Below are positions 34,145 to 63,543 of a DNA stretch of 64,000 nucleotides, piece by piece (position 1 is the stretch's first letter; the number at the start of each line of letters is the position of its first letter). The DNA lies in the IMG/VR virus record IMGVR_UViG_3300028840_005860, positions 62,001 to 126,000 of that record. One strand, 5' to 3'. A program made the translations under genes and the position numbers. A model generated the notes under the pieces. The model was not told where the DNA came from, did not search any database, and saw only the letters and a program-made list of their open reading frames with translations.

Positions 34145-34219
34145 CGGGCGGTGGCGCAGTCTGGCTAGCGCGCCTGCTTTGGGTGCAGGATGTCGCCGGT
34201 TCGAATCCGGCTCGCCCGA
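34145..34219 (+). tRNA. tRNA-Pro(TGG)
   Basis: Cloverleaf; cctgc-tt tgg gt-gcagg; GTTCGAATC. Confidence 0.9.
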
Positions 34220-34259
34220 CGAACAGAAGGAGCACGTCAAGCGAACGAAGAACACACAC

Positions 34260-34335
34260 GCCCCCGTAGCTCAGCGGAAGAGCATCGGTCTACGGAACCG
34301 AGCTGTCGGGAGTTCGAATCTCTCCGGGGGTGCCA
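34260..34335 (+). tRNA. tRNA-Arg(ACG)
   Basis: tcggt-ct acg ga-accga; encoded CCA. Confidence 0.9.
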
Positions 34336-34340
34336 TGCAC

Positions 34341-34417
34341 GTCCTCCGTAGCTCAATGGACAGAGCGTCCACCCCTGAGGGGTGGGAGGTTGCAGGTTCG
34401 ACTCCCGCGGGAGGGCG
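34341..34417 (+). tRNA. atypical tRNA: Arg-type body with enlarged anticodon arm (6-bp stem, cc TGA gg loop)
   Basis: Acceptor gtcctcc/ggagggc, D and T arms normal; anticodon arm 2 nt too long and lacks U33. Confidence 0.65.
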
Positions 34418-34427
34418 TGCAGCAGCT

Positions 34428-34502
34428 GTTCCCGTAGCTCAGCGGAAGAGCGTCGGTCTCCGGAACCGAAGGACGTGGGTTCGAGTCCCCCCGGGAATGC
34501 CA
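34428..34502 (+). tRNA. tRNA-Arg(CCG)
   Basis: tcggt-ct ccg ga-accga; CCA. Confidence 0.9.
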
Positions 34503-34503
34503 A

Positions 34504-34578
34504 CGGGATGTGGCGCAGTCTGGCTAGCGCGCGTCGTTCGGGTCGACGAGGCCGTGGGTTCAAATCCCACCATCCCGA
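34504..34578 (+). tRNA. tRNA-Pro(CGG)
   Basis: cgtcg-tt cgg gt-cgacg. Confidence 0.9.
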
Positions 34579-34812
34579 CTGAAAGAGAAACCATCATGGC
34601 GGACATCATCACGTGGACGACGCGGAGGCGGCTTTATCCGCATCGTGGAGTGGGCCCGCGAGGGCAGCCACGAGGCCGAGGTGGACGAGTTCCTCGCCCG
34701 GCAGAGGGCCGAGTGCGAGCGAGCTGAACGGAACAACCCCGTCCTGAGGGCGCGACGACGAAAGGAGAAACAACGAGAGAGGGCTGCACGACGCGCAGCC
34801 AAGAAAAAGCAA

Positions 34813-34887
34813 CGGGATATGGCGCAGTCTGGCTAGCGCACTTGACTGGGGGTCAAGGGGCCGCAGGTTCAAATCCTGCTATCCCGA
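34813..34887 (+). tRNA. tRNA-Pro(GGG)
   Basis: cttga-ct ggg gg-tcaag. Confidence 0.9.
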
Positions 34888-34922
34888 CGATGAGCGAGAA
34901 TCACGAAGAGACTACAAGCAAC

Positions 34923-35002
34923 GGATTTAGGGTCCCGTGTATGTCGGTTCGAATCCGGCCCTCGCCACCACGCGGCGAGGTAGGCGAATTGGAACAGCCG
35001 CG
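34923..35002 (+). tRNA. candidate circularly permuted tRNA-Leu(TAG): 3' half 34923-34970, 5' half 34974-35002
   Basis: 3' half ends cctcgcc-A-CCA; downstream 5' half starts ggcgagg with a Leu-type D arm; the joined halves give a perfect cggga/tcccg anticodon stem. Confidence 0.7.
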
Positions 35003-35040
35003 TAGCAACACCCATCCCTTCAACTCTCTCGCTCACAACT

Positions 35041-35116
35041 GCCGCGGTGGCCAAGCTGGTAAAGGCGCCTGATTAAGGATCAGGAGATTTTGTCGGTTCG
35101 ACTCCGACCCGCGGTA
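35041..35116 (+). tRNA. tRNA-Leu(AAG) with short variable region
   Basis: cctga-tt aag ga-tcagg; gccgcgg/ccgcggt; A73. Confidence 0.8.
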
Positions 35117-35145
35117 CAGTGTGCTGATGGAGGACGAAAAACCCC

Positions 35146-35679
35146 ATGAGCACAAAAGTCCCAACCTGCAAGGTGTGTGGAGAGACGGACCCAGCGAAAC
35201 TGGTGAAAATCTCCAGAAATAGACGCCCTTACTACAGAGGATGGTGCGTTCCCTGTTACAGCGCATACCGGAAAGAGTGGAACAGACGAAATCCAGAACG
35301 AGCGAAGGCGACGTGGGCTCGAGCCCACGAGCGTCAGAAGAAGAAACGGAGGCAAGGACAGGACACCGCCCGGTTTATCTGGGTCGATTCACGAAGATCC
35401 GACAAGAAACGAGGATTCAAAAACGACCTGACCAAAGAGTTCATCGCGGAGCAGATCACCAAAGGTTGCTCGTACTGCGGGGAGAAAACGATCCGCATGA
35501 CGCTCGACCGCATCGACAACGAACGAGGACACACGACGGACAACGTCGTGCCCGCGTGCATCCGGTGCAACCACATCCGTGGGAACATGCCCTACGAAGC
35601 ATGGCTCTGTTTTAGGGCAGCGTTGCGGCGGGCGCGACGGGAGGGGTTATTCGGGAACTGGACTGGAAGAACTAGATAA
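35146..35679 (+). mobile_element. free-standing HNH-type homing endonuclease
   Basis: CKVC...CVPC; CSYCGE...LDRIDN..GH...NVVPACIRCN; lower GC; lies between Leu tRNAs. Confidence 0.85.
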
Positions 35680-35764
35680 GCCCAGGTGGCGGAATTGGTA
35701 GACGCGGTCGGTTCAGGACCGGCTGTCTTACGGCGTGCGAGTTCAAATCTCGCCCTGGGCACCA
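35680..35764 (+). tRNA. tRNA-Leu(CAG)
   Basis: gtcgg-tt cag ga-ccggc; long variable arm; CCA. Confidence 0.92.
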
Positions 35765-35774
35765 GGAGCAGAAC

Positions 35775-36062: not shown

Positions 36063-36070
36063 GGCTGCTC

Positions 36071-37537: not shown

Positions 37538-37611
37538 CCGCAGGGGACCCGAGTAGGTCGGGTACGGGGTTGTAAACTCCGCGGTAGCAGGTTCGACTCC
37601 TGTCCTGCGGT
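37538..37611 (+). tRNA. atypical tRNA-Tyr(GTA): short variable loop, C1:G72, U73, no U8
   Basis: ccgcagg/cctgcgg; accc/gggt D stem; cgggg-tt gta aa-ctccg; gcagg-ttcgact-cctgt. Confidence 0.7.
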
Positions 37612-37615
37612 CGAA

Positions 37616-37692
37616 GGCGACCGCCGTCTCCCCAGCGCCCCGGCGCGGGCGAAAACCCGGCTCGGCCGAGGCCGTGTGGGACGGCGAGCGCC
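37616..37692 (+). ncRNA. multibranch structured RNA candidate between the two Tyr tRNAs
   Basis: Closing stem cgccgtc/gacggcg plus three internal hairpins. Confidence 0.35.
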
Positions 37693-37697
37693 ACCCT

Positions 37698-37784
37698 CGG
37701 TGGGTATGCAAGAGGCTAAAGCAATCGGACTGTAAATCCGCCGCGCACCGCGCTTCGGAGGTTCAAATCCTCCCCCACCGGCCA
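37698..37784 (+). tRNA. tRNA-Tyr(GTA), long variable arm, C1:G72, G73
   Basis: cggtggg/cccaccg; cgga-ct gta aa-tccg; CCA. Confidence 0.8.
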
Positions 37785-37836: not shown

Positions 37837-39003
37837 ATGACGAAGGAGCACATGAACGTAGGCACGATCGGCCACGTCGATCACGGAAAGACCACCCTCA
37901 CGGCGGCGATCACGAAGCTCGCGGCCGCCCTGCATGGCGGGGAGGCCAAGGACTTCGATCAGATCGACAACGCGAAGGAGGAGCGCGAGCGTGGCGTCAC
38001 GATCAACGCGTCTCACGTGGAGTACGAGTCCGCGCGGCGCCACTACGCCCACATCGACTGCCCCGGGCACGCCGACTACATCAAGAACATGATCGTCGGC
38101 GCGTCCCAGATGGAGGGTGCGATCCTGCTGGTGGACGCCTCCCAGGGGCCGCAGAAGCAGACGGTGGAGCACGTCCTCCTGGCGAACCAGGTCGGCGTCT
38201 CGAGCGTCGTGGTCTTCGTGAACAAGGTGGACGTGGCCGATCCCGACCTCCTCGAGCTCGTCGAGGTCGAGGTCGCGGAGCAGCTGGAGCGCTTCGGTTA
38301 CGCACCCGTCTTCGTGCGGGGATCAGCCCTCAAGGCCCTTCAGGCCCTGGAGACTGGGGACGCGGAGTCCGAGGACGTCGCCTGCATCCGCGAGCTCCTC
38401 GACGCCATGGACGCCCACTTCAAAGCTCCCGACCGGGACATGGACTCTCCGTTCCTGCTCCCGATCGAGCACGTCTACACGATCCCAGGCCGGGGCACCG
38501 TCGTGACCGGCCGCGTCGAGCGCGGCCGCGTCAGGGTCGGCGACAGGGTCGAGATCGCCGGTCGCCGGGATGATGGCCGGGAGGTCGTGGTCACCGGCAC
38601 GCAGGCGTTCCACCGGGACATCCCGGAGGCCCACGCGGGCCTGAACGTCGGCCTGCTCCTGCGGGGCGTCGCTCGAGACGAGGTCGAGCGCGGCCAGGTG
38701 ATCGTGGCGCCGGGCTCTATCCGGTCGCACACCTCGGGGAGCGCCGAGATCTTCGTGCTCACGAAGGAGGAGGGCGGACGTCACACGCCGTTCGGCAGCG
38801 GCTACACCCCGCAGCTGTTCTTCGGGGCCTCGGACGTGTCCGCGACCCTGAGGACCGACGAGGACGCGGCCGTCGAGCCCGGCGACAGGGCGACCGTCGC
38901 GTTCACCCTCGACAAGCCGACCGCCTTCGAGCCCGGGATGCGCTTCGCCATCCGCGAGGGCGGGAAGACGGTGGGTGCCGGCGTCGTGCTCGACGCGGGC
39001 TAG
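37837..39003 (+). CDS. tuf: elongation factor Tu (divergent)
   Basis: [18 protein letters not shown]; ERERGVTI; [15 protein letters not shown]; NKVD; GSALKAL; [14 protein letters not shown]; [13 protein letters not shown]. Confidence 0.95.
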
Positions 39004-41589: not shown

Positions 41590-41666
41590 GCGTGCGTAGC
41601 CCAAATGGTAGAGGCGCTGGCTTCAAATCCCAGGAGTTGGAGGTTCGAGTCCTCCCGCGCGCACCA
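41590..41666 (+). tRNA. tRNA-Leu(CAA) with short variable loop
   Basis: ctggc-tt caa at-cccag (C31:C39 mismatch); 5-nt variable loop; A73, CCA. Confidence 0.75.
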
Positions 41667-41667
41667 C

Positions 41668-41748
41668 GGCCCCGTGGCGGAAATGGTCTACGCGGCGGAC
41701 TTAAACTCCGCGCCTCCGGGCGTCTCGGTTCGAATCCGAGCGGGGCCA
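41668..41748 (+). tRNA. tRNA-Leu(TAA)
   Basis: gcgga-ct taa ac-tccgc; long variable arm. Confidence 0.9.
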
Positions 41749-41749
41749 C

Positions 41750-41908
41750 CTAGTCGGCGGAGAACCAGTTGCCCTGGCTGTCCTGGAGCACCCTGCGGCC
41801 GCACACGCCGCACCGGCTGCTGAACGAGCATCCGTCGAAGTCGAGCCGAGCTCCGCGACCGTCGTGCCAGCCGAGCACGTCGTGGGCGAACCACCGCAGG
41901 AACCGCAT
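41750..41908 (-). CDS. small Cys-containing protein
   Basis: MRFLRWFAHDVLGWH...CGVCG. Confidence 0.5.
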   Translation of the reverse strand: MRFLRWFAHDVLGWHDGRGARLDFDGCSFSSRCGVCGRRVLQDSQGNWFSAD

Positions 41909-45585: not shown

Positions 45586-46836
45586 TTGGATGAGGTCTTG
45601 GAGCGGCGTTTACCGAAGGATCGCCCCGGTTCTTTTGTCGGCCGTCGCTTCGGTAAACTTGTCGTGATTGCGGAGTTCGCGGGCAAGAAGTATGCGTTTG
45701 CTCCGCAGTGTCTGTGTCGGTGTGACTGCGGGAAAGAGCACTGGGTCGTTCGGGGCAACCTCGTGCGTACAAAGAGCTGTGGGTGTGGACGCCGTCCCAA
45801 TCTCGTGGGACGTAGGTTTGGAAACCTCGTTGTCGGGCGCCCCATGCCGCGCAGAACAAAGTCGGGACGCAAGCAGACGGCCTACGCTTGTCGCTGTGAC
45901 TGCGGAAAGGAGACGACCGTGTATCCCGGCGCGTTGCGGTCTGGAGAGACGGTCAGCTGTGGTTGCGTGCGAGAGATGCGATGGGCAGCTTCTCGGATTC
46001 CTACCGGGCGGCGGTTCGGTCGCCTTGAAGTGCTGGAACGTGTGCGCCGGGACGGACATCCCGGGTGGTTCTATCGATGTCGCTGTGACTGTGGAAAACA
46101 GACTATCGTCGACGGCGTCGCGCTGAAGAGAGGCGCCACGCGGAGCTGCGGGTGTCTTCGAGACGAGGTCGCTAGCCTTCCTGACGGAGAGGCCATGCGT
46201 AACGCGATCTTTTCGGGATACCGCAAGAACGCCCGAAAGAGGAACCTGCGGTTTGAGTTGGGCTTGGAGGAGGCTGGGTCTTTGTTTCAGGGGACCTGTC
46301 ACTACTGTGGCAGCCCTCCTCAGATGCGTAGCCATGCAACGGTGCGTGGAGGATACGCGGCGAACGGGATTGATCGTCCTGATAACTCCTCGGGTTACAT
46401 TCCGGGAAACATGGTTTCGTGCTGCACGATCTGTAACTTGGCAAAGGGCACGAAATCCGTGGAAGGTTTCCTGCGATGGGTTCGTCGTGTCGCGTATTTC
46501 GCGGCGACGTCGCCCATTCTCGTGCACGGAAAGCGCGAGACAGCGAAAGACCGACGCAGATTGTCGAAATACAAGGAAGGCGCTCGTGGGCGACGACTTG
46601 CCTTTGAGCTGACAGACGACCTTGCGATCGTGCTCCTGCATTCGCCCTGCACGTACTGTGGTCGGATGCCTGGTAACGGAATCGATAGGATCGATAACTC
46701 GAGAGGTTACGAGCCCGACAACGTTGTGCCATGCTGCGCGGTCTGCAATCGGGCGAAGATCTCGCTTTCCGTAGAGTGCTTCTTCGCTTGGGCTCGGCGT
46801 CTCGTAGCGCATCAGACGGAGATCTCCAACAGATAG
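45586..46836 (+). mobile_element. homing endonuclease with four G.RFG.L.V...C.CDCG repeats and two tandem HNH-like domains
   Basis: Repeats visible in the translation; CHYCG...GIDRPDN..GY...N.V.CC.ICN and CTYCG...GIDRIDN..GY...NVVPCC.VCN; lower GC; antisense to its neighbours. Confidence 0.85.
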
Positions 46837-48455
46837 CGCAACCTGTGGCTCGGCCCCTTCGTGGTTCCGAAGACCACGTGCTCGTCGTTGACGAGGGAGG
46901 CACAGTGACGGTTCGTCGCGTAAATGCTGTCGAACCCCCTCGGGCAGCCATAGAGGCTCCACGCCTTCTTAGCCATGTAGGGTTTGCCGAGCACGACGTC
47001 TCCCATGAACATGAAGGCTCCCCGCCCTCGTATGGCTCCCGCGCCGGAAGAGTACAGTCCCGAACCTATCGAGCAGTAGTTCGCGGCCTTGCGAAAGTCC
47101 GACGCCCAGTAGATTCCGTGCCCGAACGCCGCCCCCGTGATGTGGACGCCCTTCAAAGACTTGGGGAGACGCAGGTCGGTCTGCAGGATCGGAGCCACGT
47201 TCACCGAGCGCGTTCCGTGGAACAGGAGAGCCATGTTCGCTCGCTCGTAGAGATCTGCGATGTCCGAGACGTCGTGTCGCTCGTCCGGCTGCATGTCGGC
47301 CTGCTCGTGATTCCCTTTGCGGACCGACGCGACGTGCTTGGCCCCCGCGACGAAGAGGTCGTCCACTCGAGAACGCCGAATGACGAACGCATTGAGGACG
47401 CGCACGTCTCCGATGTTTCTGTGTCGGTCCTTGGACATCCTCGTGAAGGTCTCGACCACCCACTTCCCGCGCCCGCTCTTCATGTCGAGCCACTCGATCT
47501 CCGCCTTCAGCGCGGCGTTCGGATCGATCTGCTGCTCCTCCTGGACCTCGACCTCCCAGTCCTCGTTCTTCAGCGCGGCCTCGAACGCGTCGAGGTCCTG
47601 CTGCACGAGGAGGATGTTGGTCGAGTTCAGGATGACGGCGGACGGGTCTCCGCCACGAGGGATGGGTCTCGGCACGATGGTCGCGACGTAGGTCGAGAGC
47701 TCCTGGAGCTTCTTGTCCCTGAGCTGGCGGTCGTGGTCGTCACCGATCCGTTTGATCATCGCGAGGGCCTGCGGGATGAGGTCGTCGCGGACCTCGGTGA
47801 TCGCCTCCATGGTGGGGGTGACGCCCGACGCCCTGGAGGCCGCGCGGGCGTAGTCGGCGGTGCCTCCGACGAGCGACTTCGCGAGCGCGATGACCTGCGG
47901 CTGCGCGTCGATCTTCTTCTTGGAGGTCTTCTTCTTGGTGGCTTTCTTCTTGGCCTTCTTCTTCTCGACGCCGCTGTCGTCCTTGATCAGGCATGCGTCG
48001 GGGAGCCCGCGCTCGCGGGTCGCGAGGCGCTGGACGACGTATCCGTCCTTGCCGGACTTGCCGACCCAGATCTCCTTGCCGCCGACCTTCTTCTGCTGGA
48101 GCCGCTTGATGTTCTTGCTGCGGCACTGCTTCTCGAAGAACGTGCGGGCGTCATCCTCTCCGCTGCACGTGACGAACTGGAAGTCTTGCCCTCGGAAGGA
48201 GCCGTCCCAGGTCTTGCCTCCGCCGCTGACTCGTCCCCACTCGAGGTAGACGTACCAGGCTCCGTCCTGGCGCACGACCCCGGCGTGGTAGTACTTGTTG
48301 TTGTTCGCGTCCCCGAACTGGTTGACGCAGACCATGTCCGCGATCCCCACCTCGGATCCGAAGTCGTCCTGGTCGACCGCGGGGCGACCCTGGTACTTGA
48401 AGTCGTCCGCCGAGCAGCCCGACGGCATCTCTTTCCTGCCGAGTTTGACAGCCAT
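46812..48455 (-). CDS. poly(ADP-ribose) polymerase-like protein (WGR + helical + ART catalytic domain)
   Basis: NNNKYY...YLEWGRV (WGR); LLFHGT, FGHGIYWAS..KAANY, VVLGK and NDEHVVF give the H-Y-E triad. Confidence 0.9.
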   Translation of the reverse strand: MAVKLGRKEMPSGCSADDFKYQGRPAVDQDDFGSEVGIADMVCVNQFGDANNNKYYHAGVVRQDGAWYVYLEWGRVSGGGKTWDGSFRGQDFQFVTCSGEDDARTFFEKQCRSKNIKRLQQKKVGGKEIWVGKSGKDGYVVQRLATRERGLPDACLIKDDSGVEKKKAKKKATKKKTSKKKIDAQPQVIALAKSLVGGTADYARAASRASGVTPTMEAITEVRDDLIPQALAMIKRIGDDHDRQLRDKKLQELSTYVATIVPRPIPRGGDPSAVILNSTNILLVQQDLDAFEAALKNEDWEVEVQEEQQIDPNAALKAEIEWLDMKSGRGKWVVETFTRMSKDRHRNIGDVRVLNAFVIRRSRVDDLFVAGAKHVASVRKGNHEQADMQPDERHDVSDIADLYERANMALLFHGTRSVNVAPILQTDLRLPKSLKGVHITGAAFGHGIYWASDFRKAANYCSIGSGLYSSGAGAIRGRGAFMFMGDVVLGKPYMAKKAWSLYGCPRGFDSIYATNRHCASLVNDEHVVFGTTKGPSHRLRYLLEISV

Positions 48456-50021: not shown

Positions 50022-50022
50022 C

Positions 50023-50100
50023 GCCCCGTTGGTCTAGCGGCCTAGGACGCCTGGTTCTCAGCCAGGAGATTCGTGGGTTCGAATCCCACACGGGGTACCA
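50023..50100 (+). tRNA. tRNA-Glu(CTC)
   Basis: cctgg-tt ctc ag-ccagg; CCA. Confidence 0.9.
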
Positions 50101-50105
50101 TACAT

Positions 50106-50178
50106 TCCGGGGTAGCTCAGTTGGTAGAGCGTTCGATTGTTAGTCGAGGGGTCGGGGGTTCGAGACCCTCCCCCGGAG
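50106..50178 (+). tRNA. tRNA-Asn(GTT)
   Basis: ttcga-tt gtt ag-tcgag. Confidence 0.9.
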
Positions 50179-50198
50179 CCGCTTTCAAGGAGATTCCC

Positions 50199-57180: not shown

Positions 57181-58068
57181 TCAGCTCGCGGAGGCCAGGA
57201 GCCAACGTCGCGCGACCCGTCGTGTCATCTCGTGCCCGAGGTCGAGCTCGAGGCTCAGCAGCGTGCGCTCCTCGCCGCCCTCGGCCATGTGCTCCTTGGC
57301 CCCCGTCGTCCCGGGCTGTGACGGACGGGTCGGCCTGCCGGCGCTCATCCACTGGCGGAACCGCCTGCGGACGAGCTCGGCGAACCGGGGGTCGCTCTTG
57401 ATCAGGTAGTCGGCCCTGACGGTCGGATGCTGGTCGCGGCTCTCAGCGTTCGTGTTGGGGACCTGCTTCGCGCCGCCGTCGAACATGACGTCCATGAACT
57501 TGTCCCACGTGCGCTCGGCCTTCGCCTCTTCGATGTAGTGCGGGTGGAACTGGAAGCCCTCCTCCTCGGCGGCCCGCTGGAAGTCGCGGAGGTGCGACTC
57601 GCGGTCCTCGTAGAAGTGGATCTTCCTCGCGTGAGGGGTCTCGTCCATGATCCGCTTCATCTCGCGGATCTTGTAGGGCCTCGTCTGCTCCTTCTTCTGC
57701 TTGAGGACGAGCTCGTCGGGCTCGCCCACCTGGGAGAGCAGCTCGAGGATCTTGTCGCGGAAGGGTTCGGACCGGCCCGTGATGACGACCACCTTGGCGC
57801 GCGGGTTCTTCTTCGCCTTGCGGTATTCGTCGATGACGCGCTGGACGTACCAGTTCTGGTTTGGGTCAGACGGGACCAGAGGGTCGGCGAGCGATTGCGG
57901 ATCGTGCCAGAAGCTCCCGTGCTGGCTCTTCGGGACGTCGGGAGGAGGCCCTGGACTGTGGAAGATCGTGTGATCGAAGTCGAAGAAGTGCACCTCGGTC
58001 TTCGGCCCGGTCTCCTGGCGCTCGCGCTTCTTCCTGGTGGGCGCGCGTCTGGCAGATCGCAGGAACAT
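57181..58068 (-). CDS. Swiss-Army-Knife RNA-repair-like HAD phosphatase
   Basis: FFDFDHTIFHSP; VVITGRSE; LVLK...T..YK; FYEDRESH. Confidence 0.7.
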   Translation of the reverse strand: MFLRSARRAPTRKKRERQETGPKTEVHFFDFDHTIFHSPGPPPDVPKSQHGSFWHDPQSLADPLVPSDPNQNWYVQRVIDEYRKAKKNPRAKVVVITGRSEPFRDKILELLSQVGEPDELVLKQKKEQTRPYKIREMKRIMDETPHARKIHFYEDRESHLRDFQRAAEEEGFQFHPHYIEEAKAERTWDKFMDVMFDGGAKQVPNTNAESRDQHPTVRADYLIKSDPRFAELVRRRFRQWMSAGRPTRPSQPGTTGAKEHMAEGGEERTLLSLELDLGHEMTRRVARRWLLASAS

Positions 58069-59560: not shown

Positions 59561-59636
59561 GGGGCACTAGCTCAACGGACAGAGCAGCGGCCTTCTAAGC
59601 CGCCGGTTGCAGGTTCAAGTCCTGCGTGCCCTGCCA
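59561..59636 (+). tRNA. tRNA-Arg(TCT)
   Basis: gcggc-ct tct aa-gccgc; CCA. Confidence 0.92.
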
Positions 59637-59678
59637 CTACTGGGCGGACCCGAAGGGCCTCCGTCCAGGGAGAAATCT

Positions 59679-59765
59679 GGAGCGGTGGCCGAGAGGCCGA
59701 AGGCGTCGTCCTGCTAAGGCGAAGTGCTCGAGAGGGCACCGTGGGTTCGAATCCCACCCGCTCCG
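59679..59765 (+). tRNA. tRNA-Ser(GCT)
   Basis: tcgtc-ct gct aa-ggcga; long variable arm. Confidence 0.9.
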
Positions 59766-59776
59766 CAACGCCACAC

Positions 59777-59861
59777 GGGGTCGCAGCAGCTCCTCGCGGG
59801 GACGCCCCGAAGGAGTTTGGTAGGCGGGACGACCGCCGGGTTCGAATCCCACTGCGCCCCT
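59777..59861 (+). ncRNA. tRNA-like RNA (9-bp acceptor, 3-bp T stem, no D/anticodon cloverleaf)
   Basis: ggggtcgcag/ctgcgcccc; ggg-ttcgaat-ccc; long 13-bp arm and 5-bp arm. Confidence 0.5.
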
Positions 59862-59865
59862 CTTT

Positions 59866-59952
59866 GGAAGGTAGGCGAATGTTGGTTCGTCGCGCTCGCC
59901 TGGAAAGCGAGTGGGCCACACGGTCCCGAGAGTTCGATTCTCTCACCTTCCG
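59866..59952 (+). tRNA. tRNA-Ser(GGA)
   Basis: ctcgc-ct gga aa-gcgag; long variable arm. Confidence 0.88.
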
Positions 59953-59960
59953 CCGGACAT

Positions 59961-60047
59961 GGAAGGCCAAGCAGATCGGCGACTGCATCCGGCTTGAACC
60001 CGGACGAGGCGTGACAGCCCTTGGGAGTTCGACTCTCCCGCCTTCCG
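59961..60047 (+). tRNA. tRNA-Ser(TGA)
   Basis: tccgg-ct tga ac-ccgga; long variable arm; C8. Confidence 0.85.
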
Positions 60048-60114
60048 CTGAGGACCGAAAAGGACCAACGCACCTGTTATTGACAAGCTCTAGCTACCTT
60101 TCTAACCTTTTCTC

Positions 60115-60780
60115 ATGAGGAAAAACCGAGCGCGAGCACGGATTGTGCTCAGCCAGATACCAAAACGAACCCTTCAAAAAATCGTCCGGGAGCACGCCAC
60201 TTTCGTCGGGGTGCTTCGACAACTGGACCTCAGTCCACGGAGCCGAACGACCGTTCAACTTCAAGACGTCCTCGATGAACGAGGGATCGATTACTCACAC
60301 ATCGAAAACCGTTCCCAGTTACGGTGGGAAAAAATCGCAGAGGTCATCGCATGTTCTCACTCTCACACGGAGGTCCTGACCAAACTCGGACTCAAAAACG
60401 CGGGCGGTAACCGAAAACACCTGATGAAGGAGATCGAGAAACGAGGGATCGACACATCTCATTTTCGTCGCAAAGCGTGGAACGAGGGCCGCCCCAGCCA
60501 CAATCGTGTCCCCGCACGAGAGATTTTGGTCCTACTGCCCGAGTCCGCGTACCGCACCCGACGAAGTCAACTACGCAGGGCCTTGCTGGAGATCGGGGTG
60601 GAGGAGGTCTGTCGGGAATGCGGTCAAGGGCCTGAATGGAACGGAAAGCCCCTGCGCTTGGACATCGATCACATCGACGGCAACTGGAGAAACAACAGGA
60701 GGAAAAATCTCAGGTTTCTGTGTCCGAACTGCCACACTCAAACACCCACATACGGAAATCGTGGAGGGTCAAGCCGATAG
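60115..60780 (+). mobile_element. HNH endonuclease with duplicated N-terminal RGID.SH repeat
   Basis: CRECG...WNGKPL.LDIDHIDG...NN...NLRFLCPNCH; the stop lies inside tRNA-Ser(CGA). Confidence 0.9.
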
Positions 60781-60855
60781 CTGGCGACGGCACCGGTTTC
60801 GAAAACCGGCGAGGTGTAACAGCCCTTCTGGGTTCGACCCCCAGGCCCTCCGCCA
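60763..60855 (+). tRNA. tRNA-Ser(CGA)
   Basis: ccggt-tt cga aa-accgg; long variable arm; CCA. Confidence 0.88.
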
Positions 60856-61188: not shown

Positions 61189-61194
61189 AAACAC

Positions 61195-61268
61195 GCGGAT
61201 GTAGCTCAGCTGGTCAGAGCGCGACGTTGCCAACGTCGATGTCGGGAGTTCGACTCTCCTCATCCGCT
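61195..61268 (+). tRNA. tRNA-Gly(GCC)
   Basis: cgacg-tt gcc aa-cgtcg. Confidence 0.92.
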
Positions 61269-61470
61269 CCGACGAACCCCAACAAGGAGAACGACACCAT
61301 CGATCATGACATCTTTCGCCCGGGCCTCTTGGAGGGCCTTTTTGGACCCGGACGCGCGCGGCGCCGGGGGCGACGAAAAGACCGCGAAGCCGTGGACCCG
61401 GAGCCTTCGCCGGCGCTCCGGTTCTCCTACCCGGTCGGGCAGCGCCGGGGCGCGGAAGCTGCCCAACCCT

Positions 61471-61541
61471 GCGCGTGAAGTGTTGTGGCTGCACACTTCC
61501 CTCCCTAGGAAGAAGCGAGGGTTCGATCCCCTCTACGCGCT
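61471..61541 (+). tRNA. tRNA-Gly(CCC)
   Basis: gcgcgtg/tacgcgc; cttcc-ct ccc ta-ggaag. Confidence 0.8.
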
Positions 61542-61557
61542 CCGCGAAAGGAAACCC

Positions 61558-61740
61558 ATGACACCGAGATACCATAAGCTCAGGGGCCACCTGGCGGCCA
61601 CGCATCACTGGTCGTGGTTCCCCGTCAGCAAGAACCGGCTCGCCCGTCGGGCGCGCCGGGCTCTCAAGCGGGCGACCCGCAGGGAGGTCAAGCGACACGG
61701 GCTAACCCTGATCGAGGAGGGGTTGAACGACAGGGGATGA
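61558..61740 (+). CDS. small basic protein
   Basis: MTPRYHKLRG...RRARRALKRATRRE. Confidence 0.5.
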   Translation: MTPRYHKLRGHLAATHHWSWFPVSKNRLARRARRALKRATRREVKRHGLTLIEEGLNDRG

Positions 61741-62086
61741 GAGGACCAGGTGGGCCCAGTGCCACCTCGAGCGCCGCACGGAGATCGGGACCGAGGAGAC
61801 GACGTCCTGGTTCCCGGTCCGACACGCGAGGGTCGGGAACTCGGTCGAGCTCAAAAGAGGCGACGGAGAGTGGACGACGGGCTGGATCGTGAGGCGGGCC
61901 CGGCCCGAGGTCGACGAACCCCCCGACTGGAGGAAGGCGATCAGACAGCACAGACACCGAACGGGAGACGACAGACCCAAGCAACGAAAGGAAGAGTGAA
62001 TTGGGAGCGGCAAACGAAAAGGAAGGGGCGGCAGGAACCTCGAGAACCTTCGCGTCTCGGGACACACCGAGGACGACCGTCCGGTC

Positions 62087-62329
62087 GTGTCGGGATGGTT
62101 CCCCCTCGTCAACTCCGAGGGCATCCCCCTCGACGTCCTGCTCGGTCAGTTCCAGCGCCGCGGCCTCGTGCCCGACTGGATCGACTTCGTCGAGAGCTGC
62201 CTCAGGTGCGACTGGAACGTTGGCTCCCTGAGGACCAAGATCGAGACCGCCGTGGGCGACGTTTACGGACCCGAACACAGAGGGGAGGTGATGAGGAGAT
62301 TCGACGACTACATGCGCATGCGGGAGTAG
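62087..62329 (+). CDS. small protein resembling an internal alanyl-tRNA synthetase segment
   Basis: SGWFPLVNSEGIPLDVLL..FQRRGLVPDWIDF resembles AlaRS G..AF.LYDT.GFPLDL.....ERGL.VD..GF; start uncertain. Confidence 0.45.
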   Translation: MSGWFPLVNSEGIPLDVLLGQFQRRGLVPDWIDFVESCLRCDWNVGSLRTKIETAVGDVYGPEHRGEVMRRFDDYMRMRE

Positions 62330-62392
62330 CTCAGCTGGCAGAGCGTCAGCCTTCCAAGCTGAATGTCGCGAGTTCGATTCTCGTCTCCCGCT
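62320..62392 (+). tRNA. tRNA-Gly(TCC)
   Basis: tcagc-ct tcc aa-gctga. Confidence 0.92.
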
Positions 62393-62396
62393 CAAT

Positions 62397-62472
62397 GGGG
62401 CCTTAGCTCAGATGGGAGAGCGCTGGTTTTGCACGCCGGAGGGCGTCGGTTCGAATCCGACAGGCTCCACCA
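62397..62472 (+). tRNA. tRNA-Ala(TGC)
   Basis: ctggt-tt tgc ac-gccgg; G3:U70; CCA. Confidence 0.88.
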
Positions 62473-62483
62473 GGAAGGACGAC

Positions 62484-62831
62484 ATGGCCAAGCCAATCGA
62501 AATAGACGGCATCCTCTACCGAAAACGCCGGGGGAGGCTCGTGAAGATCCCCGACGAGTGGGTGGGCCGCACGGTCGGTTCCCGGACGATCCGCAGGAGG
62601 CACTCCAAGACCAGAGCCAAGGCCATCTACGGCAAGGTGAACCGAGCCAAGGACAAGGCCGCGATGCGACGAGGCGAGGAGCCGCATCCGAAGAGCCGCA
62701 AGACGATAGGCTGCTGGCACCCGTTCTCGGGGCGCACCGACAGATACCGGAACAAGTACCGGACCCAACGATCGAGGAACACGAAACGACGAGACGACCA
62801 CCAAGGAGACGCAGGAGACGTGGGGCAGTAG
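62484..62831 (+). CDS. basic hypothetical protein
   Basis: MAKPIEIDGILYRKRRG...; SD AGGAAGGA. Confidence 0.6.
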   Translation: MAKPIEIDGILYRKRRGRLVKIPDEWVGRTVGSRTIRRRHSKTRAKAIYGKVNRAKDKAAMRRGEEPHPKSRKTIGCWHPFSGRTDRYRNKYRTQRSRNTKRRDDHQGDAGDVGQ

Positions 62832-62894
62832 CTCAGCTGGGAGAGCGCCACGTTCGCAACGTGGAAGTCGTGGGTTCGAATCCCACCTGCTCCA
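62822..62894 (+). tRNA. tRNA-Ala(CGC)
   Basis: ccacg-tt cgc aa-cgtgg. Confidence 0.9.
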
Positions 62895-62910
62895 CCGCAC
62901 CATGACACAC

Positions 62911-62983
62911 GGGGCCATAGCTCAACTGGGAGAGCACCACGCTGGCAGCGTGGGGGTTCGGAGTTCAAATCTCCGTGGCTCCA
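62911..62983 (+). tRNA. tRNA-Ala(GGC)
   Basis: ccacg-ct ggc ag-cgtgg. Confidence 0.9.
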
Positions 62984-63045
62984 CATCGCTCATCAACGTC
63001 GAAAGGAACCAGAGGAAACATGTAACAAACGAGGAGGTCGTCATC

Positions 63046-63261
63046 ATGCGCACCGTACACGCAGACATGAGCATGCGGAACCGAACCCGCGATTGGAAGA
63101 TCCCGCTCGGGGGCAACACCGCCTCCCTGAGGGCCATCGCCAAGCCGGGGACGGTGGTTCGCGTGACTGACGACGACATGGAAGTCGAGGCCCTGGTCGA
63201 GGTCAGCAACGGGATGCTCGTTGCTTCGCCGCGGTGGAAGACCCTGGCGTACGTCCACTGA
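63046..63261 (+). CDS. hypothetical protein
   Basis: MRTVHADM..., SD GAGGAGG. Confidence 0.55.
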   Translation: MRTVHADMSMRNRTRDWKIPLGGNTASLRAIAKPGTVVRVTDDDMEVEALVEVSNGMLVASPRWKTLAYVH

Positions 63262-63337
63262 CTCGGGTCCGACAAGCAAGGAGGGCATGCCTATGACACG
63301 TACAGAACGATGGCGAGGCTGTCGATGACAGCCTCCA

Positions 63338-63410
63338 AGGGCGTTAGCTCAGCTGGTAGAGCAGCGGTCTCCAAAACCGCAGGTCGGGGGTTCGAGACCC
63401 TCACGCCCTG
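63338..63410 (+). tRNA. tRNA-Trp(CCA)
   Basis: gcggt-ct cca aa-accgc. Confidence 0.92.
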
Positions 63411-63471
63411 CTGAGTCCAAGTCGAGAAGAGTACTCGTGGTCTCGCCTCCCGCAAGAGATGCAAAAGACCA

Positions 63472-63543
63472 GGCTGGATAGTCAAGTGGCAAGACGCTCG
63501 GCCGCAACCCGAGAGATCGTCGGTTCGATTCCGACTCCAGCCT
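63472..63543 (+). tRNA. tRNA-Cys(GCA)
   Basis: ctcgg-cc gca ac-ccgag; U73; C33 in place of U33. Confidence 0.85.

What the first reader, a model, noticed from the sequence alone, without database searches (positions are those of the whole stretch)
34145..63543. A phage-encoded translation-rescue system: complete isoacceptor tRNA sets plus EF-Tu, Pth2, RNA-repair HAD and non-canonical tRNAs
The tRNAs are grouped by amino acid and several families are complete or nearly so: Pro x3, Ala x3, Gly x3, Ser x4, Glu x2, Leu x5 including the odd ones, and Arg x3 plus one atypical. Many deviate from bacterial consensus: A34 Leu, short-arm Leu, C1:G72 Tyr, C8 Ser, C33 Cys and a permuted Leu. The same region encodes a tRNA carrier (EF-Tu), a peptidyl-tRNA recycler (Pth2), an RNA end-healing HAD and an AlaRS-like fragment. 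Established knowledge: host anticodon nucleases and EF-Tu-targeting defences (PrrC, Lit, VapC, PARIS) abort phage infection and phage tRNAs can counter them. Inference: this is an integrated, nuclease-resistant parallel tRNA supply chain.
Basis: partly seen in the sequence, partly recalled or inferred. Interest (0 to 1): 0.75.

Follow-up and report, generated by a model that had tools for sequence, protein, structure and literature searches.

The report
Jumbo-phage tRNA array with own EF-Tu
A 230-kb marine phage, probably of myxobacteria, carries a 29-kb island of 28 tRNA genes with its own unusual EF-Tu and a peptidyl-tRNA hydrolase; related giant phages share this layout, but whether it serves supply or defence evasion is untested.

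Summary
ARAGORN finds 28 same-strand tRNA genes at 34145-63544, grouped by amino acid. The window also encodes a three-domain EF-Tu (37837-39003), a Pth2 (48747-49391) and a HAD_SAK_1 phosphatase (57181-58068, minus strand). No AlaRS-like domain exists anywhere in the genome.

The "permuted Leu" is a real sequence pattern at 34892-35034. It has the topology of a YrlA-type Y RNA, a tRNA mimic, and is not a permuted tRNA gene.

The EF-Tu is the main result. It is about 55% identical to housekeeping EF-Tu. It falls in a deeply separated clade shared by giant-phage contigs and extra, stand-alone EF-Tu copies in Nannocystaceae. In 15 of 17 viral relatives this EF-Tu sits inside a dense tRNA array. 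Pth2 co-occurs in 10 of 18 records. HAD co-occurs in only 2 of 18, and EF-Ts in 1 of 18.

The GTPase motifs are intact. Two amino-acid-pocket residues and residue 259 are changed across most or all of the clade.

Nuclease or Lit resistance is not supported for this phage. Its Lit site is nearly canonical (RGVTI), and half of the comparable anticodon loops equal host-lineage ones.

Verdict: a real, conserved translation island and a new variant of a known kind. Its function is inferred only.

The parts
34145..35764 (+). tRNA cluster 1: Pro-UGG, Arg-ACG, odd pseudo-tRNA (34341-34417), Arg-CCG, Pro-CGG, Pro-GGG, Y-RNA-like element, Leu-AAG (77 nt, short arm), HNH gene, Leu-CAG
   Evidence: ARAGORN and Rfam. 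The same order is seen in L018. The region aligns to L018 at 71% over about 1 kb.
34341..34417 (+). Odd 77-nt tRNA-like gene. It has a G.G pair at the base of the acceptor stem, a 6-bp anticodon stem, C33 and a T-stem mismatch.
   Evidence: Rfam tRNA score is 31.7 bits; fold. The L018 orthologue has lost its T loop and anticodon region, so a decaying pseudo-tRNA is likely.
34892..35034 (+). Parts: closing helix 34892-34899/35027-35034; anticodon-arm-like hairpin 34921-34938 (loop UUUAGGG); T arm 34943-34959; acceptor 3' strand 34960-34966; ACCA 34967-34970; acceptor 5' strand 34974-34980; D arm 34983-34999.
   Evidence: Full-length Rfam YrlA alignment at 19.6 bits, E 0.053, which is below the gathering score. 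The L018 orthologue has 4 of 7 acceptor pairs changed on both sides and still paired. Stronger family members occur in other arrays.
35146..35679 (+). HNH/endonuclease VII-type homing endonuclease gene inside the tRNA array
   Evidence: phrog_1035, E 4.5e-26. Homologues sit in the arrays of L001, L024 and L023.
37538..37784 (+). tRNA cluster 2: a weak 75-nt Tyr-GUA-like gene (37538-37612) and an 87-nt tRNA-Tyr-GUA with C1:G72 and G73 (37698-37784), 52 nt upstream of the EF-Tu gene
   Evidence: ARAGORN. Rfam scores 29.8 and 48.2 bits. tRNA-Tyr directly upstream of the EF-Tu gene is also seen in L001, L018, L024, L026 and L037, and in L200 with one ORF between them.
37837..39003 (+). Divergent EF-Tu, 388 aa, with an AAGGA ribosome-binding site 7 nt upstream
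   Evidence: Pfam GTP_EFTU, D2 and D3. It passes the NCBIfam subfamily cut-offs but falls below the TIGR00485 equivalog cut-off. Tree; residue analysis.
41590..41750 (+). tRNA cluster 3: Leu-CAA (77 nt, short arm) and Leu-UAA (83 nt)
   Evidence: L018 has Leu-UAA and Leu-CAA at the syntenic place.
46812..48455 (-). PARP-type ADP-ribosyltransferase (547 aa) with a WGR-like N-terminus. It is a neighbour of Pth2; a role in the island is not shown.
   Evidence: Pfam PARP, E 1.2e-16. WGR-like and H-Y-E-like motifs are read. A partial homologue lies at the syntenic place in L018.
48747..49391 (+). Peptidyl-tRNA hydrolase of the Pth2 (archaeal/eukaryal) type, 214 aa, with an N-terminal extension of about 80 aa
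   Evidence: Pfam PTH2 at 103 bits. TIGR00283 at 90.2 bits, above its cut-off of 82. Syntenic in G005. Absent from four host-lineage genomes.
49945..50180 (+). tRNA cluster 4: Glu-UUC, Glu-CUC, Asn-GUU
57181..58068 (-). HAD phosphatase (HAD_SAK_1 family) with DFDHT motif I and no kinase or ligase domain. It is not a conserved member of the island.
   Evidence: Pfam at 59 bits; motif; phrog_415 'polynucleotide kinase', E 4e-6. Found in only 2 of 18 related records.
59561..60855 (+). tRNA cluster 5: Arg-UCU, Ser-GCU, Ser-GGA, Ser-UGA (C8), HNH gene 60115-60780, Ser-CGA
   Evidence: HNH by Pfam, with homologues in L020, L006 and L025.
61195..63544 (+). tRNA cluster 6: Gly-GCC, Gly-CCC, Gly-UCC, Ala-UGC, Ala-CGC, Ala-GGC, Trp-CCA, Cys-GCA (C33)
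   Evidence: tRNA-Trp is 96% and tRNA-Gly(UCC) 95% identical to Nannocystaceae genes. A Nannocystaceae MAG contig carries an array in a similar order, Ser-Gly-Arg-Ala-Trp-Cys.

Best explanation
The stretch is the translation island of a roughly 230-kb marine jumbo phage that most likely infects Nannocystaceae (Myxococcota). It is a long, horizontally mobile tRNA-gene array: 28 genes in six same-strand clusters ordered by amino acid, with two homing-endonuclease genes inside. Two elongation-cycle proteins are embedded in it. One is an intact but deeply divergent EF-Tu placed directly behind a tRNA-Tyr gene, as in bacterial tufB operons. The other is a Pth2-type peptidyl-tRNA hydrolase that the host lineage lacks.

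The likely working: the array raises the tRNA pool during infection. It covers codons the phage uses far more than the host proxy (AGG, AGA, GGA, CUU, UCC, AUA) and also whole isoacceptor families. The phage EF-Tu adds carrier capacity for these extra aminoacyl-tRNAs, and its remodelled amino-acid pocket may suit them. Pth2 recycles tRNA from dropped-off peptidyl-tRNA. Together they make phage protein synthesis less dependent on the host's supply.

Shown: gene identities, intact GTPase motifs, the separate EF-Tu clade, the conserved tRNA-EF-Tu(-Pth2) linkage in related viral contigs, and the link to Nannocystaceae.

Inferred: expression, charging, ternary-complex formation, and the benefit to the phage. 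Whether selection acts mainly through supply or through escape from defences is also inferred.
For: - tRNA genes and families.
- EF-Tu, Pth2 and HNH identities.
- Phage nature of the 230-kb record: large terminase, UvsX-like recombinase, and CheckV 90% completeness.
- EF-Tu keeps G1-G5, His84, His66, Lys89/Asn90 and Thr382.
- The tree splits canonical EF-Tu of all sampled phyla from a 67-row clade with SH-aLRT 100. The canonical side includes the Nannocystaceae's own copies. The 67-row clade holds the window, 17 large viral contigs and stand-alone bacterial paralogues.
- Enhygromyxa has two canonical tuf genes plus one paralogue that is 71% identical to the phage gene.
- 15 of 17 viral clade members lie in arrays with at least 5 tRNA genes (3 to 42) within 10 kb. 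Canonical bacterial tuf loci have a median of 0 and a maximum of 6.
- Synteny with L018 and L001.
- Pth2 is in 10 of 18 records and 7 of 8 near-complete ones, and lies within 16 kb of EF-Tu in several. It is absent from host-lineage genomes.
- Codon use: AGG is 10.8x, AGA 6x, GGA 3.4x, CUU 2.5x and UCC 2.4x the host proxy, each with a cognate phage tRNA.
- tRNA-Trp and tRNA-Gly are 95-96% identical to Nannocystaceae genes.
- Huge phages are already reported to carry EF-Tu and many tRNAs (PMC7162821).
- Long tRNA arrays spread by gene transfer together with homing endonucleases (PMC8421152).
Against: - No expression data: no RNA run was listed.
- The set lacks tRNAs for Met, Phe, His, Lys, Asp and Thr, so it cannot replace the host pool.
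- Many tRNAs serve codons the phage does not over-use, such as GCG, CCG, UCG, UUG and CAA. Codon compensation therefore explains only part of the set.
- The host codon table rests on only about 8,100 codons from three proxy genomes.
- Some array members look degenerate (34341-34417, and possibly 37538-37612).
- No EF-Ts gene is present, so nucleotide exchange must rely on the host or be dispensable.
- Why the phage carries the alternative EF-Tu clade rather than a housekeeping copy is unexplained.
Confidence: 0.55

Rival explanations
1. Counter-defence. The island exists mainly to survive abortive-infection systems that hit the elongation machinery. Phage tRNAs would replace or out-compete tRNAs cut by anticodon or variable-loop nucleases. 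The divergent EF-Tu would replace host EF-Tu cleaved or modified by Lit-like proteases, caspase-like Thoeris effectors or kinases. Pth2 would clear blocked or acylated tRNAs.
For: - EF-Tu is a known defence target: Lit and type IV Thoeris cleave it, and Avs7 co-opts it (PMC13581612).
- 12 of 25 viral-contig EF-Tus, from two separate tree lineages, have the Lit-site segment rewritten from RGITI to K(T/Q)VTI. None of 79 bacterial or unassigned rows does.
- Septu cleaves the variable loop of tRNA-Tyr (abstract of PMC13096335). Here Leu (twice) and a Tyr-like gene occur as short-arm versions, and short tRNA-Leu genes are frequent in related arrays.
- tRNA-Cys has C33 and tRNA-Gly(CCC) has U37.
- Pth2 is of a type the host lineage lacks.
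Against: - This window's EF-Tu keeps RGVTI and Thr382. KERGVTI also occurs in one canonical bacterial EF-Tu.
- 11 of 22 comparable anticodon loops are identical to Nannocystaceae tRNAs.
- tRNA-Leu(AAG) is present in Enhygromyxa.
- The HAD is not conserved.
- No RtcB and no convincing RNA ligase are present, and no AlaRS fragment.
- The same EF-Tu clade sits in ordinary chromosomal contexts in bacteria. This argues that its special features did not evolve for phage escape.
Confidence: 0.22
2. Dedicated carrier. The divergent EF-Tu clade is specialised for particular cargo, with an amino-acid pocket tuned to it. The cargo could be array-encoded tRNAs of unusual build (type-I tRNA-Leu, Y1:R72 tRNA-Tyr, CCA-ended Y-RNA-like molecules) or particular aminoacyl groups.
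For: - Pocket residues 216 and 218 (mature E. coli numbering) are D and F in 28 of 30 canonical rows. They are G/A/S/N/H plus H/C/Y in 55 of 67 clade rows; the window has H and Y.
- These are two of the six residues randomised to make EF-Sep, which carries D217G and F219Y (PMC6386890).
- E259Q and R333G occur in 99% of the clade.
- tRNA-Tyr next to the gene has a pyrimidine-purine 1:72 pair in the window, L018, L001 and Enhygromyxa.
- Several Y-RNA-like elements encode ACCA after the acceptor strand.
- By my own recollection, there is a precedent in nematode mitochondrial EF-Tu1 and EF-Tu2, which serve truncated tRNAs.
Against: - T-stem contact residues Q329 and E378 and the 5'-end contacts K89 and N90 are conserved.
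- Most array tRNAs are ordinary cloverleaves.
- The closest relative's tRNA-Tyr is G1:C72.
- Bacterial clade members mostly have no array nearby.
- No binding data exist.
Confidence: 0.12
3. Selfish mobile array. The tRNA array is chiefly a homing-endonuclease-driven mobile element that accretes and loses genes. EF-Tu, Pth2, HAD and PARP are passengers of little consequence, and the odd tRNAs are decay products.
For: - Two HNH/EndoVII genes lie inside the clusters, with homologues at the same places in other arrays.
- The pseudo-tRNA at 34341 is degenerate in L018.
- Gene content between arrays is fluid.
- Long tRNA arrays are known to spread horizontally and are often poorly expressed (PMC8421152).
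Against: - EF-Tu is intact, with all catalytic motifs, across about 17 diverged viral contigs at 57-69% identity. This implies purifying selection.
- The tRNA-EF-Tu linkage and order are conserved between the window, L018 and L001.
- Compensatory changes keep the helices of the Y-RNA-like element.
Confidence: 0.1

Closest known systems
Translation gene sets of huge phages (Al-Shayeb et al. 2020, PMC7162821)
   Same: Phage genomes above 200 kb with tens of tRNA genes plus translation factors. That paper lists elongation factors G, Tu and Ts and proposes that they maintain translation efficiency during infection.
   Different: Several points are worked out here. The EF-Tu belongs to a separate deep clade shared with extra bacterial copies. 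It sits inside the tRNA array behind a tRNA-Tyr gene. Its amino-acid pocket is altered. It comes without EF-Ts (1 of 18 records) but often with Pth2. That paper's main text does not mention peptidyl-tRNA hydrolase.
[quoted passage not shown]
   Same: Dense same-strand arrays of up to about 43 tRNA genes, spread by horizontal transfer and associated with homing endonucleases. They add redundant isoacceptors. L038, on a 9.4-Mb chromosome, has 37 tRNA genes in 7.4 kb next to a clade EF-Tu and an HNH gene.
   Different: The array here is broken into six clusters over 29 kb with protein genes in between, and it lies in a lytic-type jumbo phage. The paper's only mention of elongation factor Tu is not in the passages the search displayed, so I could not see whether an EF-Tu link was noted there.
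Bacterial tufB operon (tRNA-Thr, Tyr, Gly, Thr, then tuf)
   Same: A tRNA-Tyr gene lies immediately upstream of the EF-Tu gene on the same strand. Enhygromyxa's own operon shows the classical order.
   Different: Only tRNA-Tyr is kept, its 1:72 pair is inverted (C1:G72), and the EF-Tu is of the alternative clade. No secE-nusG follows.
YrlA Y RNAs, tRNA mimics bound by Ro60/Rsr (Chen et al. 2014, PMC4201824; Rfam RF02553)
   Same: The topology matches: a closing helix formed by the two ends, a T arm, an acceptor-like stem closed by a loop, and a D arm. A 7-bp acceptor stem followed by ACCA recalls M. smegmatis YrlA, which RNase P cleaves and which receives CCA. Clear family members lie in related viral arrays.
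   Different: The window copy scores only 19.6 bits against a gathering score of 69 and lacks the exact GNCGAAN0-1G motif. It carries an extra anticodon-arm-like hairpin. It has no Ro60 gene in the phage or in Enhygromyxa.
Type I (short variable arm) tRNA-Leu of Streptomyces coelicolor (PMC6614811)
   Same: A bacterial-type tRNA-Leu without the long variable arm. According to that paper's abstract, the single LeuRS charges both types.
   Different: Here the short forms sit in phage arrays, often beside long forms with the same anticodon in related contigs. Charging by a Nannocystaceae LeuRS is untested.
Phage tRNA-repair and tRNA-replacement counter-defences (T4 Pnkp/Rnl1 against PrrC; T5 and mycobacteriophage tRNAs against anticodon nucleases) - from my own knowledge
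   Same: Phage-borne tRNAs and a HAD-family phosphatase of the polynucleotide-kinase-phosphatase kind (weak phrog_415 match).
   Different: No kinase domain, no RtcB and no convincing RNA ligase are present. Anticodon loops are mostly host-like. The HAD is not conserved among relatives.
Alternative EF-Tu paralogues of bacteria (for example Streptomyces Tuf3) - from my own knowledge; tuf3 is mentioned in PMC7157823
   Same: A second, strongly divergent EF-Tu encoded away from the ribosomal operons in bacteria with large genomes.
   Different: Relatedness to Tuf3 was not tested. The clade here is shared with giant phages.

Membership tests
EF-Tu (translational GTPase) | Three-domain architecture: GTP_EFTU, D2 and D3 | tested here: met
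   Pfam E 5e-56, 4e-17 and 1e-24, all above the cut-offs
EF-Tu (translational GTPase) | Nucleotide-binding and catalytic motifs: GHVDHGKT, Thr61, DCPGH with His84, NKxD, SAL | tested here: met
   All are present in the alignment to Salmonella EF-Tu
EF-Tu (translational GTPase) | Scores as an equivalog of housekeeping EF-Tu (TIGR00485 cut-off 522.4 bits) | tested here: not met
   509.5 bits. It does pass the subfamily models NF000766, NF009372 and NF009373.
EF-Tu (translational GTPase) | Groups with housekeeping EF-Tu of bacteria | tested here: not met
   It falls in a separate 67-row clade, split with SH-aLRT 100. It is 54-58% identical to canonical copies, including those of Nannocystaceae.
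EF-Tu (translational GTPase) | Conserved amino-acid pocket (H66, E215, D216, F218, T228, N273) and Glu259, which I recall as the A76-stacking residue | tested here: not met
   H66, E215, T228 and N273 are kept. D216 is H, F218 is Y and E259 is Q. Pocket residues as listed in PMC6386890.
EF-Tu (translational GTPase) | Binds aminoacyl-tRNA and delivers it to the ribosome | not testable with these tools
   This needs biochemistry
Pth2 peptidyl-tRNA hydrolase | Match to the PTH2 domain above curated cut-offs | tested here: met
   Pfam 103.3 bits (cut-off 23). TIGR00283 90.2 bits (cut-off 82). NF003314 97.8 bits is below its cut-off of 126.
Swiss-Army-Knife RNA-repair HAD (HAD_SAK_1) | HAD fold with the DxDxT nucleophile motif | tested here: met
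   Pfam 59.1 bits (cut-off 25.6). DFDHT at residues 30-34.
Swiss-Army-Knife RNA-repair HAD (HAD_SAK_1) | Fusion or neighbourhood with RNA ligase, kinase or other RNA-repair domains | tested here: not met
   No Walker A motif in the protein. No RtcB in the genome. The only RNA_ligase match scores 16.9 bits and lies more than 100 kb away.
Long tRNA gene array (L-array) | Many same-strand, closely spaced tRNA genes, supernumerary and patchily distributed, with linked homing endonucleases | tested here: met
   28 genes on one strand. Two HNH genes lie inside. Homologous arrays occur in phage contigs, in a Nannocystaceae MAG contig and on a 9.4-Mb chromosome.
YrlA Y RNA (RF02553) | Reaches the Rfam gathering score (69 bits) | tested here: not met
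   19.6 bits, E 0.053 in a 176-nt search, aligned over the full model
YrlA Y RNA (RF02553) | Topology: end-to-end closing helix, T arm, loop-closed acceptor-like stem, D arm | tested here: met
   Helices are kept through compensatory changes in L018.
YrlA Y RNA (RF02553) | GNCGAAN0-1G Rsr-binding motif near the 5' end | tested here: not met
   The window has GAGCGAGAAU. Canonical members in L006, L015 and L186 have GGCGAAUG or GACGAAUG. Motif as given in PMC4201824.
YrlA Y RNA (RF02553) | Encoded next to a Ro60/TROVE gene | tested here: not met
   No TROVE match in G000, G005 or Enhygromyxa. TROVE is present in G010 and G016, and near the array in L038.
Permuted tRNA gene (algal type) | 3' half upstream of 5' half with complementary acceptor strands | tested here: met
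Permuted tRNA gene (algal type) | Halves that would rejoin into a regular cloverleaf through a bulge-helix-bulge junction cut by a splicing endonuclease | tested here: inconclusive
   The anticodon-like stem has a conserved bulged C, and the junction is a long flank helix rather than an evident bulge-helix-bulge. L018 ends in ACAA, not ACCA. To my knowledge bacteria lack the tRNA splicing endonuclease.
AlaRS or AlaX fragment | Match to the tRNA-synt_2c or tRNA_SAD domain | tested here: not met
   No match at E<=1 in the whole genome. The positive controls matched in all 14 control genomes.
Nuclease-evading phage tRNAs | Anticodon-loop differences from the host tRNA of the same anticodon | tested here: inconclusive
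   11 of 22 loops are identical and most others differ only at position 32 or 38. The exceptions are Cys C33 and Gly-CCC U37. The host is inferred, the host tRNA set is partial, and no nuclease was tested.

The most novel reading that the evidence does not exclude
The divergent EF-Tu clade, the array tRNAs and Pth2 form a semi-orthogonal elongation branch. The array tRNAs include short-arm versions of the long-arm tRNAs and the CCA-ended Y-RNA-like molecules. In this reading the EF-Tu has a de-acidified amino-acid pocket and preferentially carries the array's own RNAs. Phage translation would then keep running when host EF-Tu or host tRNAs are disabled. The same cassette would have been exchanged repeatedly between giant phages and Nannocystaceae chromosomes, where it serves as a stress or back-up elongation system.
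Probability: 0.13. Interest if true: 0.85.

Novelty: new variant of a known kind. Interest (0 to 1): 0.58.

Why it matters
EF-Tu is among the most conserved and abundant cell proteins, and it is a target or co-factor of several anti-phage systems. This work finds a distinct EF-Tu lineage with an altered amino-acid pocket. In giant phages it lives almost only inside tRNA arrays, and it is also kept as an extra copy by large-genome myxobacteria. That gives a concrete, testable handle on two questions: why giant phages carry translation genes, and what alternative EF-Tu copies do in bacteria.

The work also yields three smaller leads:
- A Y-RNA-like tRNA mimic with no Ro60 partner in this phage (window 34892-35034), and clearer YrlA-like copies in related tRNA arrays.
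- Short-arm tRNA-Leu genes recur in these arrays.
- A virus-only rewriting of the EF-Tu segment that the Lit protease cuts occurs in other phages, though not in this one.

If the factor proves selective for certain aminoacyl-tRNAs, it could also interest people who engineer EF-Tu for unusual amino acids.

Tried and rejected
- **AlaRS-like fragment:** searched the whole genome with PF01411 and PF07973 and found nothing.
- **tRNA-repair pathway around the HAD:** no RtcB. The only RNA_ligase match is at 16.9 bits and far away. The protein has no kinase motif. HAD_SAK_1 is present in 2 of 18 relatives. I rejected it as a conserved part of the island.
- **Phage EF-Ts:** absent here and in 17 of 18 records.
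- **Phage TadA-like deaminase for tRNA-Leu(AAG):** absent.
- **Cultured-phage relatives:** megablast of 20 kb found only a 47-nt tRNA match. tblastn of EF-Tu found only host contamination in GenBank phage records.
- **Expression:** three DNA metagenome runs from marine sediment and seawater hold the sequence, but no RNA run was listed.
- **More copies of the window-type Y-RNA-like element:** an exact search for the 16-nt flank in IMG/VR gave 14 loci, of which only the L018 record was a true copy.
- **Prophage origin of the Enhygromyxa EF-Tu paralogue:** 60 kb around it share only EF-Tu with the phage. Rejected.
- **Promoter and terminator scan:** not above shuffled expectation.
- **Orthologue of the 75-nt Tyr-like gene in L018:** the sequences do not align.
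- **PARP/EF-Tu link in the literature:** nothing useful in PMC9503650.
- **The 201-aa ORF near EF-Tu:** it has a sulfotransferase-like fold with no evident tRNA link.
- **Not done:** a covariance model for the Y-RNA-like family and a 3-D model of the EF-Tu.

Full report
**What the window is.** The window is bases 62001-126000 of a 230,069-bp IMG/VR virus record that CheckV rates 90% complete. GC content is about 65%. PHROGs finds a large terminase, a UvsX-like recombinase and an ExoV/Dda-like helicase elsewhere in the record. Most large proteins have no family. No cultured phage is related at the DNA level. The sequence occurs in marine sediment and seawater metagenomes.

**Check of the observation.**
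- ARAGORN finds 28 tRNA genes, all on the + strand, between 34145 and 63544. Rfam's tRNA model finds 26 at gathering score. The other two (Ser-UGA 59961, Ser-CGA 60763) appear as sub-threshold tRNA-Sec-like hits.
- The genes form six clusters ordered by amino acid. They give full three-member sets for Pro, Ala and Gly, four Ser, two Glu, four Leu and three Arg.
- Pfam confirms a three-domain EF-Tu (37837-39003), Pth2 (48747-49391) and a HAD_SAK_1 phosphatase (57181-58068, minus strand).
- An AlaRS-like fragment is not there. Neither the catalytic domain nor the tRNA_SAD domain matches anywhere in the genome at E<=1.
- The whole genome holds 36 tRNA genes and none for Met, Phe, His, Lys, Asp or Thr.

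**The EF-Tu.**
- It is 388 aa and keeps every GTPase motif. It also keeps His84, His66, Lys89/Asn90, Gln329, Glu378 and Thr382.
- It is only about 55% identical to housekeeping EF-Tu. It falls just under NCBI's equivalog cut-off while passing the subfamily models.
- Its best matches, at 68-79% identity, are stand-alone EF-Tu genes in Nannocystaceae and other Myxococcota, outside ribosomal operons.
- Enhygromyxa salina has two canonical tuf genes (56% identical to the phage gene) plus one such paralogue (71%). A Nannocystaceae MAG shows the same pattern.
- A 104-row tree separates canonical EF-Tu of all sampled phyla from a 67-row clade with SH-aLRT 100. The canonical side includes the Nannocystaceae's own copies. 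The 67-row clade holds the window, 17 large viral contigs (190-620 kb) and these bacterial paralogues. Viral and bacterial members are interleaved in part of the clade, and ten viral contigs form a basal virus-only group.
- Clade signatures in mature E. coli numbering are V104L, D109Q, M112Q, loss of G164, E259Q, R333G and others.
- Two of the six residues that line the amino-acid pocket are changed. Positions 216/218 are D/F in 28 of 30 canonical rows, but G/A/S/N/H with H/C/Y in most clade rows. The window has H/Y. The same two positions were mutated (D217G, F219Y in precursor numbering) in EF-Sep, which was engineered for a negatively charged amino acid (PMC6386890). This points to altered cargo preference, but nothing more can be said without binding data.

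**Linkage with tRNA arrays.**
- In 15 of 17 clade members on viral contigs, the EF-Tu gene has 5 to 42 tRNA genes within 10 kb. Canonical bacterial tuf loci have a median of 0 and a maximum of 6. Bacterial clade members usually have none.
- One bacterial member, on a 9.4-Mb chromosome, lies beside a 37-gene array, an HNH gene and a Ro60 gene.
- The closest syntenic relative, on a 618-kb contig (L018, record G005), has this order: Pro, Arg, Arg, Pro, Pro, Leu-AAG, Leu-CAG, Tyr, EF-Tu, then Leu-UAA and Leu-CAA. Several flanking proteins are shared at 46-71% identity.
- A tRNA-Tyr gene directly precedes the EF-Tu gene in the window, L001, L018, L024 and L026, and in Enhygromyxa. This echoes the tufB operon, which Enhygromyxa also has in classical form.
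- The L018 and Enhygromyxa tRNA-Tyr genes are nearly identical. The tRNA-Tyr-EF-Tu cassette has therefore moved between phage and host lineage.
- The 60 kb around the Enhygromyxa copy share nothing else with the phage.

**Other parts of the island.**
- Pth2 is present in 10 of 18 EF-Tu-bearing viral records, and in 7 of the 8 that are at least 90% complete. It lies 10-12 kb from EF-Tu in the window and in G005. It is absent from three Nannocystaceae genomes and from Albitalea, so it is not a host-type enzyme.
- EF-Ts is absent here and in 17 of 18 records.
- The HAD has an intact DFDHT motif but no kinase or ligase partner. It is found in only 2 of 18 records. I do not count it as part of a conserved system.
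- Two HNH/EndoVII homing-endonuclease genes lie inside the clusters, with homologues at matching places in other arrays. This fits what is known of mobile long tRNA arrays (PMC8421152).

**Host and codon use.**
- Phage tRNA-Trp is 96% identical to a Nannocystaceae gene and tRNA-Gly(UCC) is 95% identical.
- A Nannocystaceae MAG contig carries an array with a similar order: Ser, Gly, Arg, Ala, Trp, Cys.
- I compared phage codon use with a small host proxy of about 8,100 codons. The phage over-uses AGG (10.8x), AGA, GGA, UCC, CUU and AUA, and has tRNAs for each. It also carries tRNAs for codons it does not over-use.
- CUC is the commonest Leu codon, and the phage has no GAG-anticodon tRNA. Decoding CUC with Leu-AAG would need A34-to-I editing. 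The phage has no TadA-like gene. Enhygromyxa itself has a tRNA-Leu(AAG), so this trait belongs to the host lineage rather than being a phage oddity.

**The odd tRNAs.**
- The 77-nt gene at 34341-34417 has an orthologue in L018 that has lost its T loop and anticodon region. Decay is the simplest reading.
- The 75-nt Tyr-like gene has no alignable orthologue in L018.
- Short (74-79 nt) tRNA-Leu genes are frequent in these arrays. In L019 every Leu anticodon occurs in both a long and a short form. A bacterial LeuRS that charges both types is known from Streptomyces (PMC6614811).
- Anticodon loops of 11 of 22 comparable phage tRNAs are identical to Nannocystaceae tRNAs with the same anticodon. Most others differ only at position 32 or 38. 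Cys C33 and Gly-CCC U37 are the exceptions.

**The 'permuted Leu'.**
- It lies between tRNA-Pro(GGG) and tRNA-Leu(AAG). The order on the + strand is: a T arm; a 7-nt acceptor 3' strand; ACCA; three bases; the perfectly complementary 5' strand; a D arm. An anticodon-arm-like hairpin lies upstream, and the outer flanks pair with each other.
- L018 has the same element with nearly identical flanks. Four of its seven acceptor pairs, one T-stem pair and the closing pair of the hairpin are changed on both sides and still pair. The structure is therefore under selection.
- This topology, with ends in the 'anticodon' position and the acceptor stem closed by a loop, is that of YrlA Y RNAs (PMC4201824).
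- Rfam's YrlA model aligns over its full length but weakly: 19.6 bits, E 0.053 in a 176-nt search.
- Related viral arrays hold clear YrlA-like RNAs at 37-53 bits with E down to 1e-13. They carry the GNCGAAN0-1G motif.
- My own scan for this layout gave 13 hits in 2.06 Mb of fetched loci and none in shuffled sequence.
- The window copy lacks the exact Rsr motif, and the phage has no Ro60 gene. It is best described as a divergent, orphan member of that kind.

**Defence evasion.**
- EF-Tu is a known target or co-factor of Lit, type IV Thoeris and Avs7 (PMC13581612).
- Twelve of 25 viral-contig EF-Tus, from two separate tree lineages, have the segment around the Lit cleavage site rewritten from RGITI to K(T/Q)VTI. 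None of 79 bacterial or unassigned rows does. This supports the general idea for those phages.
- The window's protein reads RGVTI, a variant also seen in one canonical bacterial EF-Tu, and it keeps Thr382.
- For this phage, the sequence supports the supply reading better than the escape reading. The two are not exclusive.

**Verdict.** The finding is real and the island is conserved. EF-Tu and many tRNAs in huge phages were already reported (PMC7162821), so the kind is known. The new points are:
- the separate EF-Tu clade shared with myxobacterial extra copies;
- its embedding in tRNA arrays behind tRNA-Tyr;
- the altered amino-acid pocket;
- the frequent Pth2 partner of a type foreign to the host;
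- the Y-RNA-like mimic in the array.

All functional statements are inferred. No RNA data could be found.

Noticed in passing
window 45468-46811: A stretch of 1,344 nt has no codon periodicity and lies between two minus-strand genes. It holds three copies of a 24-nt motif (TGTCGSTGTGACTG...) spaced 174 and 189 nt apart. In copies two and three the motif is followed about 60 nt later by CAGCTGYGG (GAGCTGTGG after the first). The equivalent gap in L018 is only about 480 nt. It could be iterons, promoters or an RNA.
   Followed up: partly
window 46812-48455 (-): A 547-aa protein has a WGR-like N-terminus and a PARP catalytic domain with H-Y-E-like residues. It is transcribed divergently from Pth2. 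A genuine PARP-type ADP-ribosyltransferase in a phage translation island; its target is unknown.
   Followed up: partly
L005, L006, L009, L013-L017, L019-L022 (EF-Tu genes at about 10001-11170 of each locus): There is a virus-only rewriting of EF-Tu switch I, from DNAPEE(K/R)xRGITI to (A/S)KGGRDxxK(T/Q)VTI. It removes Gly59 at the Lit cleavage site and occurs in two separate tree lineages. It is absent from all 79 bacterial or unassigned rows and from the window.
   Followed up: partly
L019, L020, L025, L017, L003, L001, L038 and window 35041, 41590: Short-arm (74-79 nt) tRNA-Leu genes are common in EF-Tu-linked arrays. In L019 all five Leu anticodons occur in both a long and a short form.
   Followed up: partly
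L028:6850-7020 (genome about 26,850-27,020, minus strand; outside the window): This is a second element with the same layout as the Y-RNA-like one: T arm, acceptor 3' strand, ACCUGA, complementary 5' strand and a Leu-like D arm.
   Followed up: no
L015:7411-7541, L015:3135-3297, L006:4810-4943, L186:1501-1669 and 2035-2174, L184:1501-1633: Clear YrlA-like Y RNAs (37-53 bits) lie inside the tRNA arrays of other EF-Tu-bearing viral contigs. Some encode ACCA after the acceptor strand. A Ro60/TROVE gene is present in only some of these records.
   Followed up: partly
L144/L149 (Nannocystaceae MAG G003, contig C38) and L195:11287-11852 (Enhygromyxa C2): Host-lineage genomes carry tRNA arrays with an order like the phage's. 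G003 has Ser x4, Gly, Arg, Ala x3, Trp and Cys. Enhygromyxa has Ser-CGA, Ser-GGA, Ser-UGA and Cys, 32 kb from its divergent EF-Tu.
   Followed up: partly
window 54812-55420 (+), 41908-43080 (-), 43092-43529 (-): Three further genes sit between the tRNA clusters: a pyruvoyl-dependent arginine decarboxylase-like gene, a DUF4419 gene and an M23 peptidase gene. No link to translation is evident.
   Followed up: no
window 36071-36676 (-), genome 47165-47722 (-), L200:705-1316: A sulfotransferase-fold protein family has two copies in this phage. One copy sits between tRNA-Tyr and EF-Tu on the contig whose EF-Tu is the closest relative at 89% identity.
   Followed up: partly
window 61471-61543: tRNA-Gly(CCC) has a 3-bp D stem and U at position 37 of the anticodon loop (CUCCCUA). 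Its Rfam score is only 47.6 bits.
   Followed up: no
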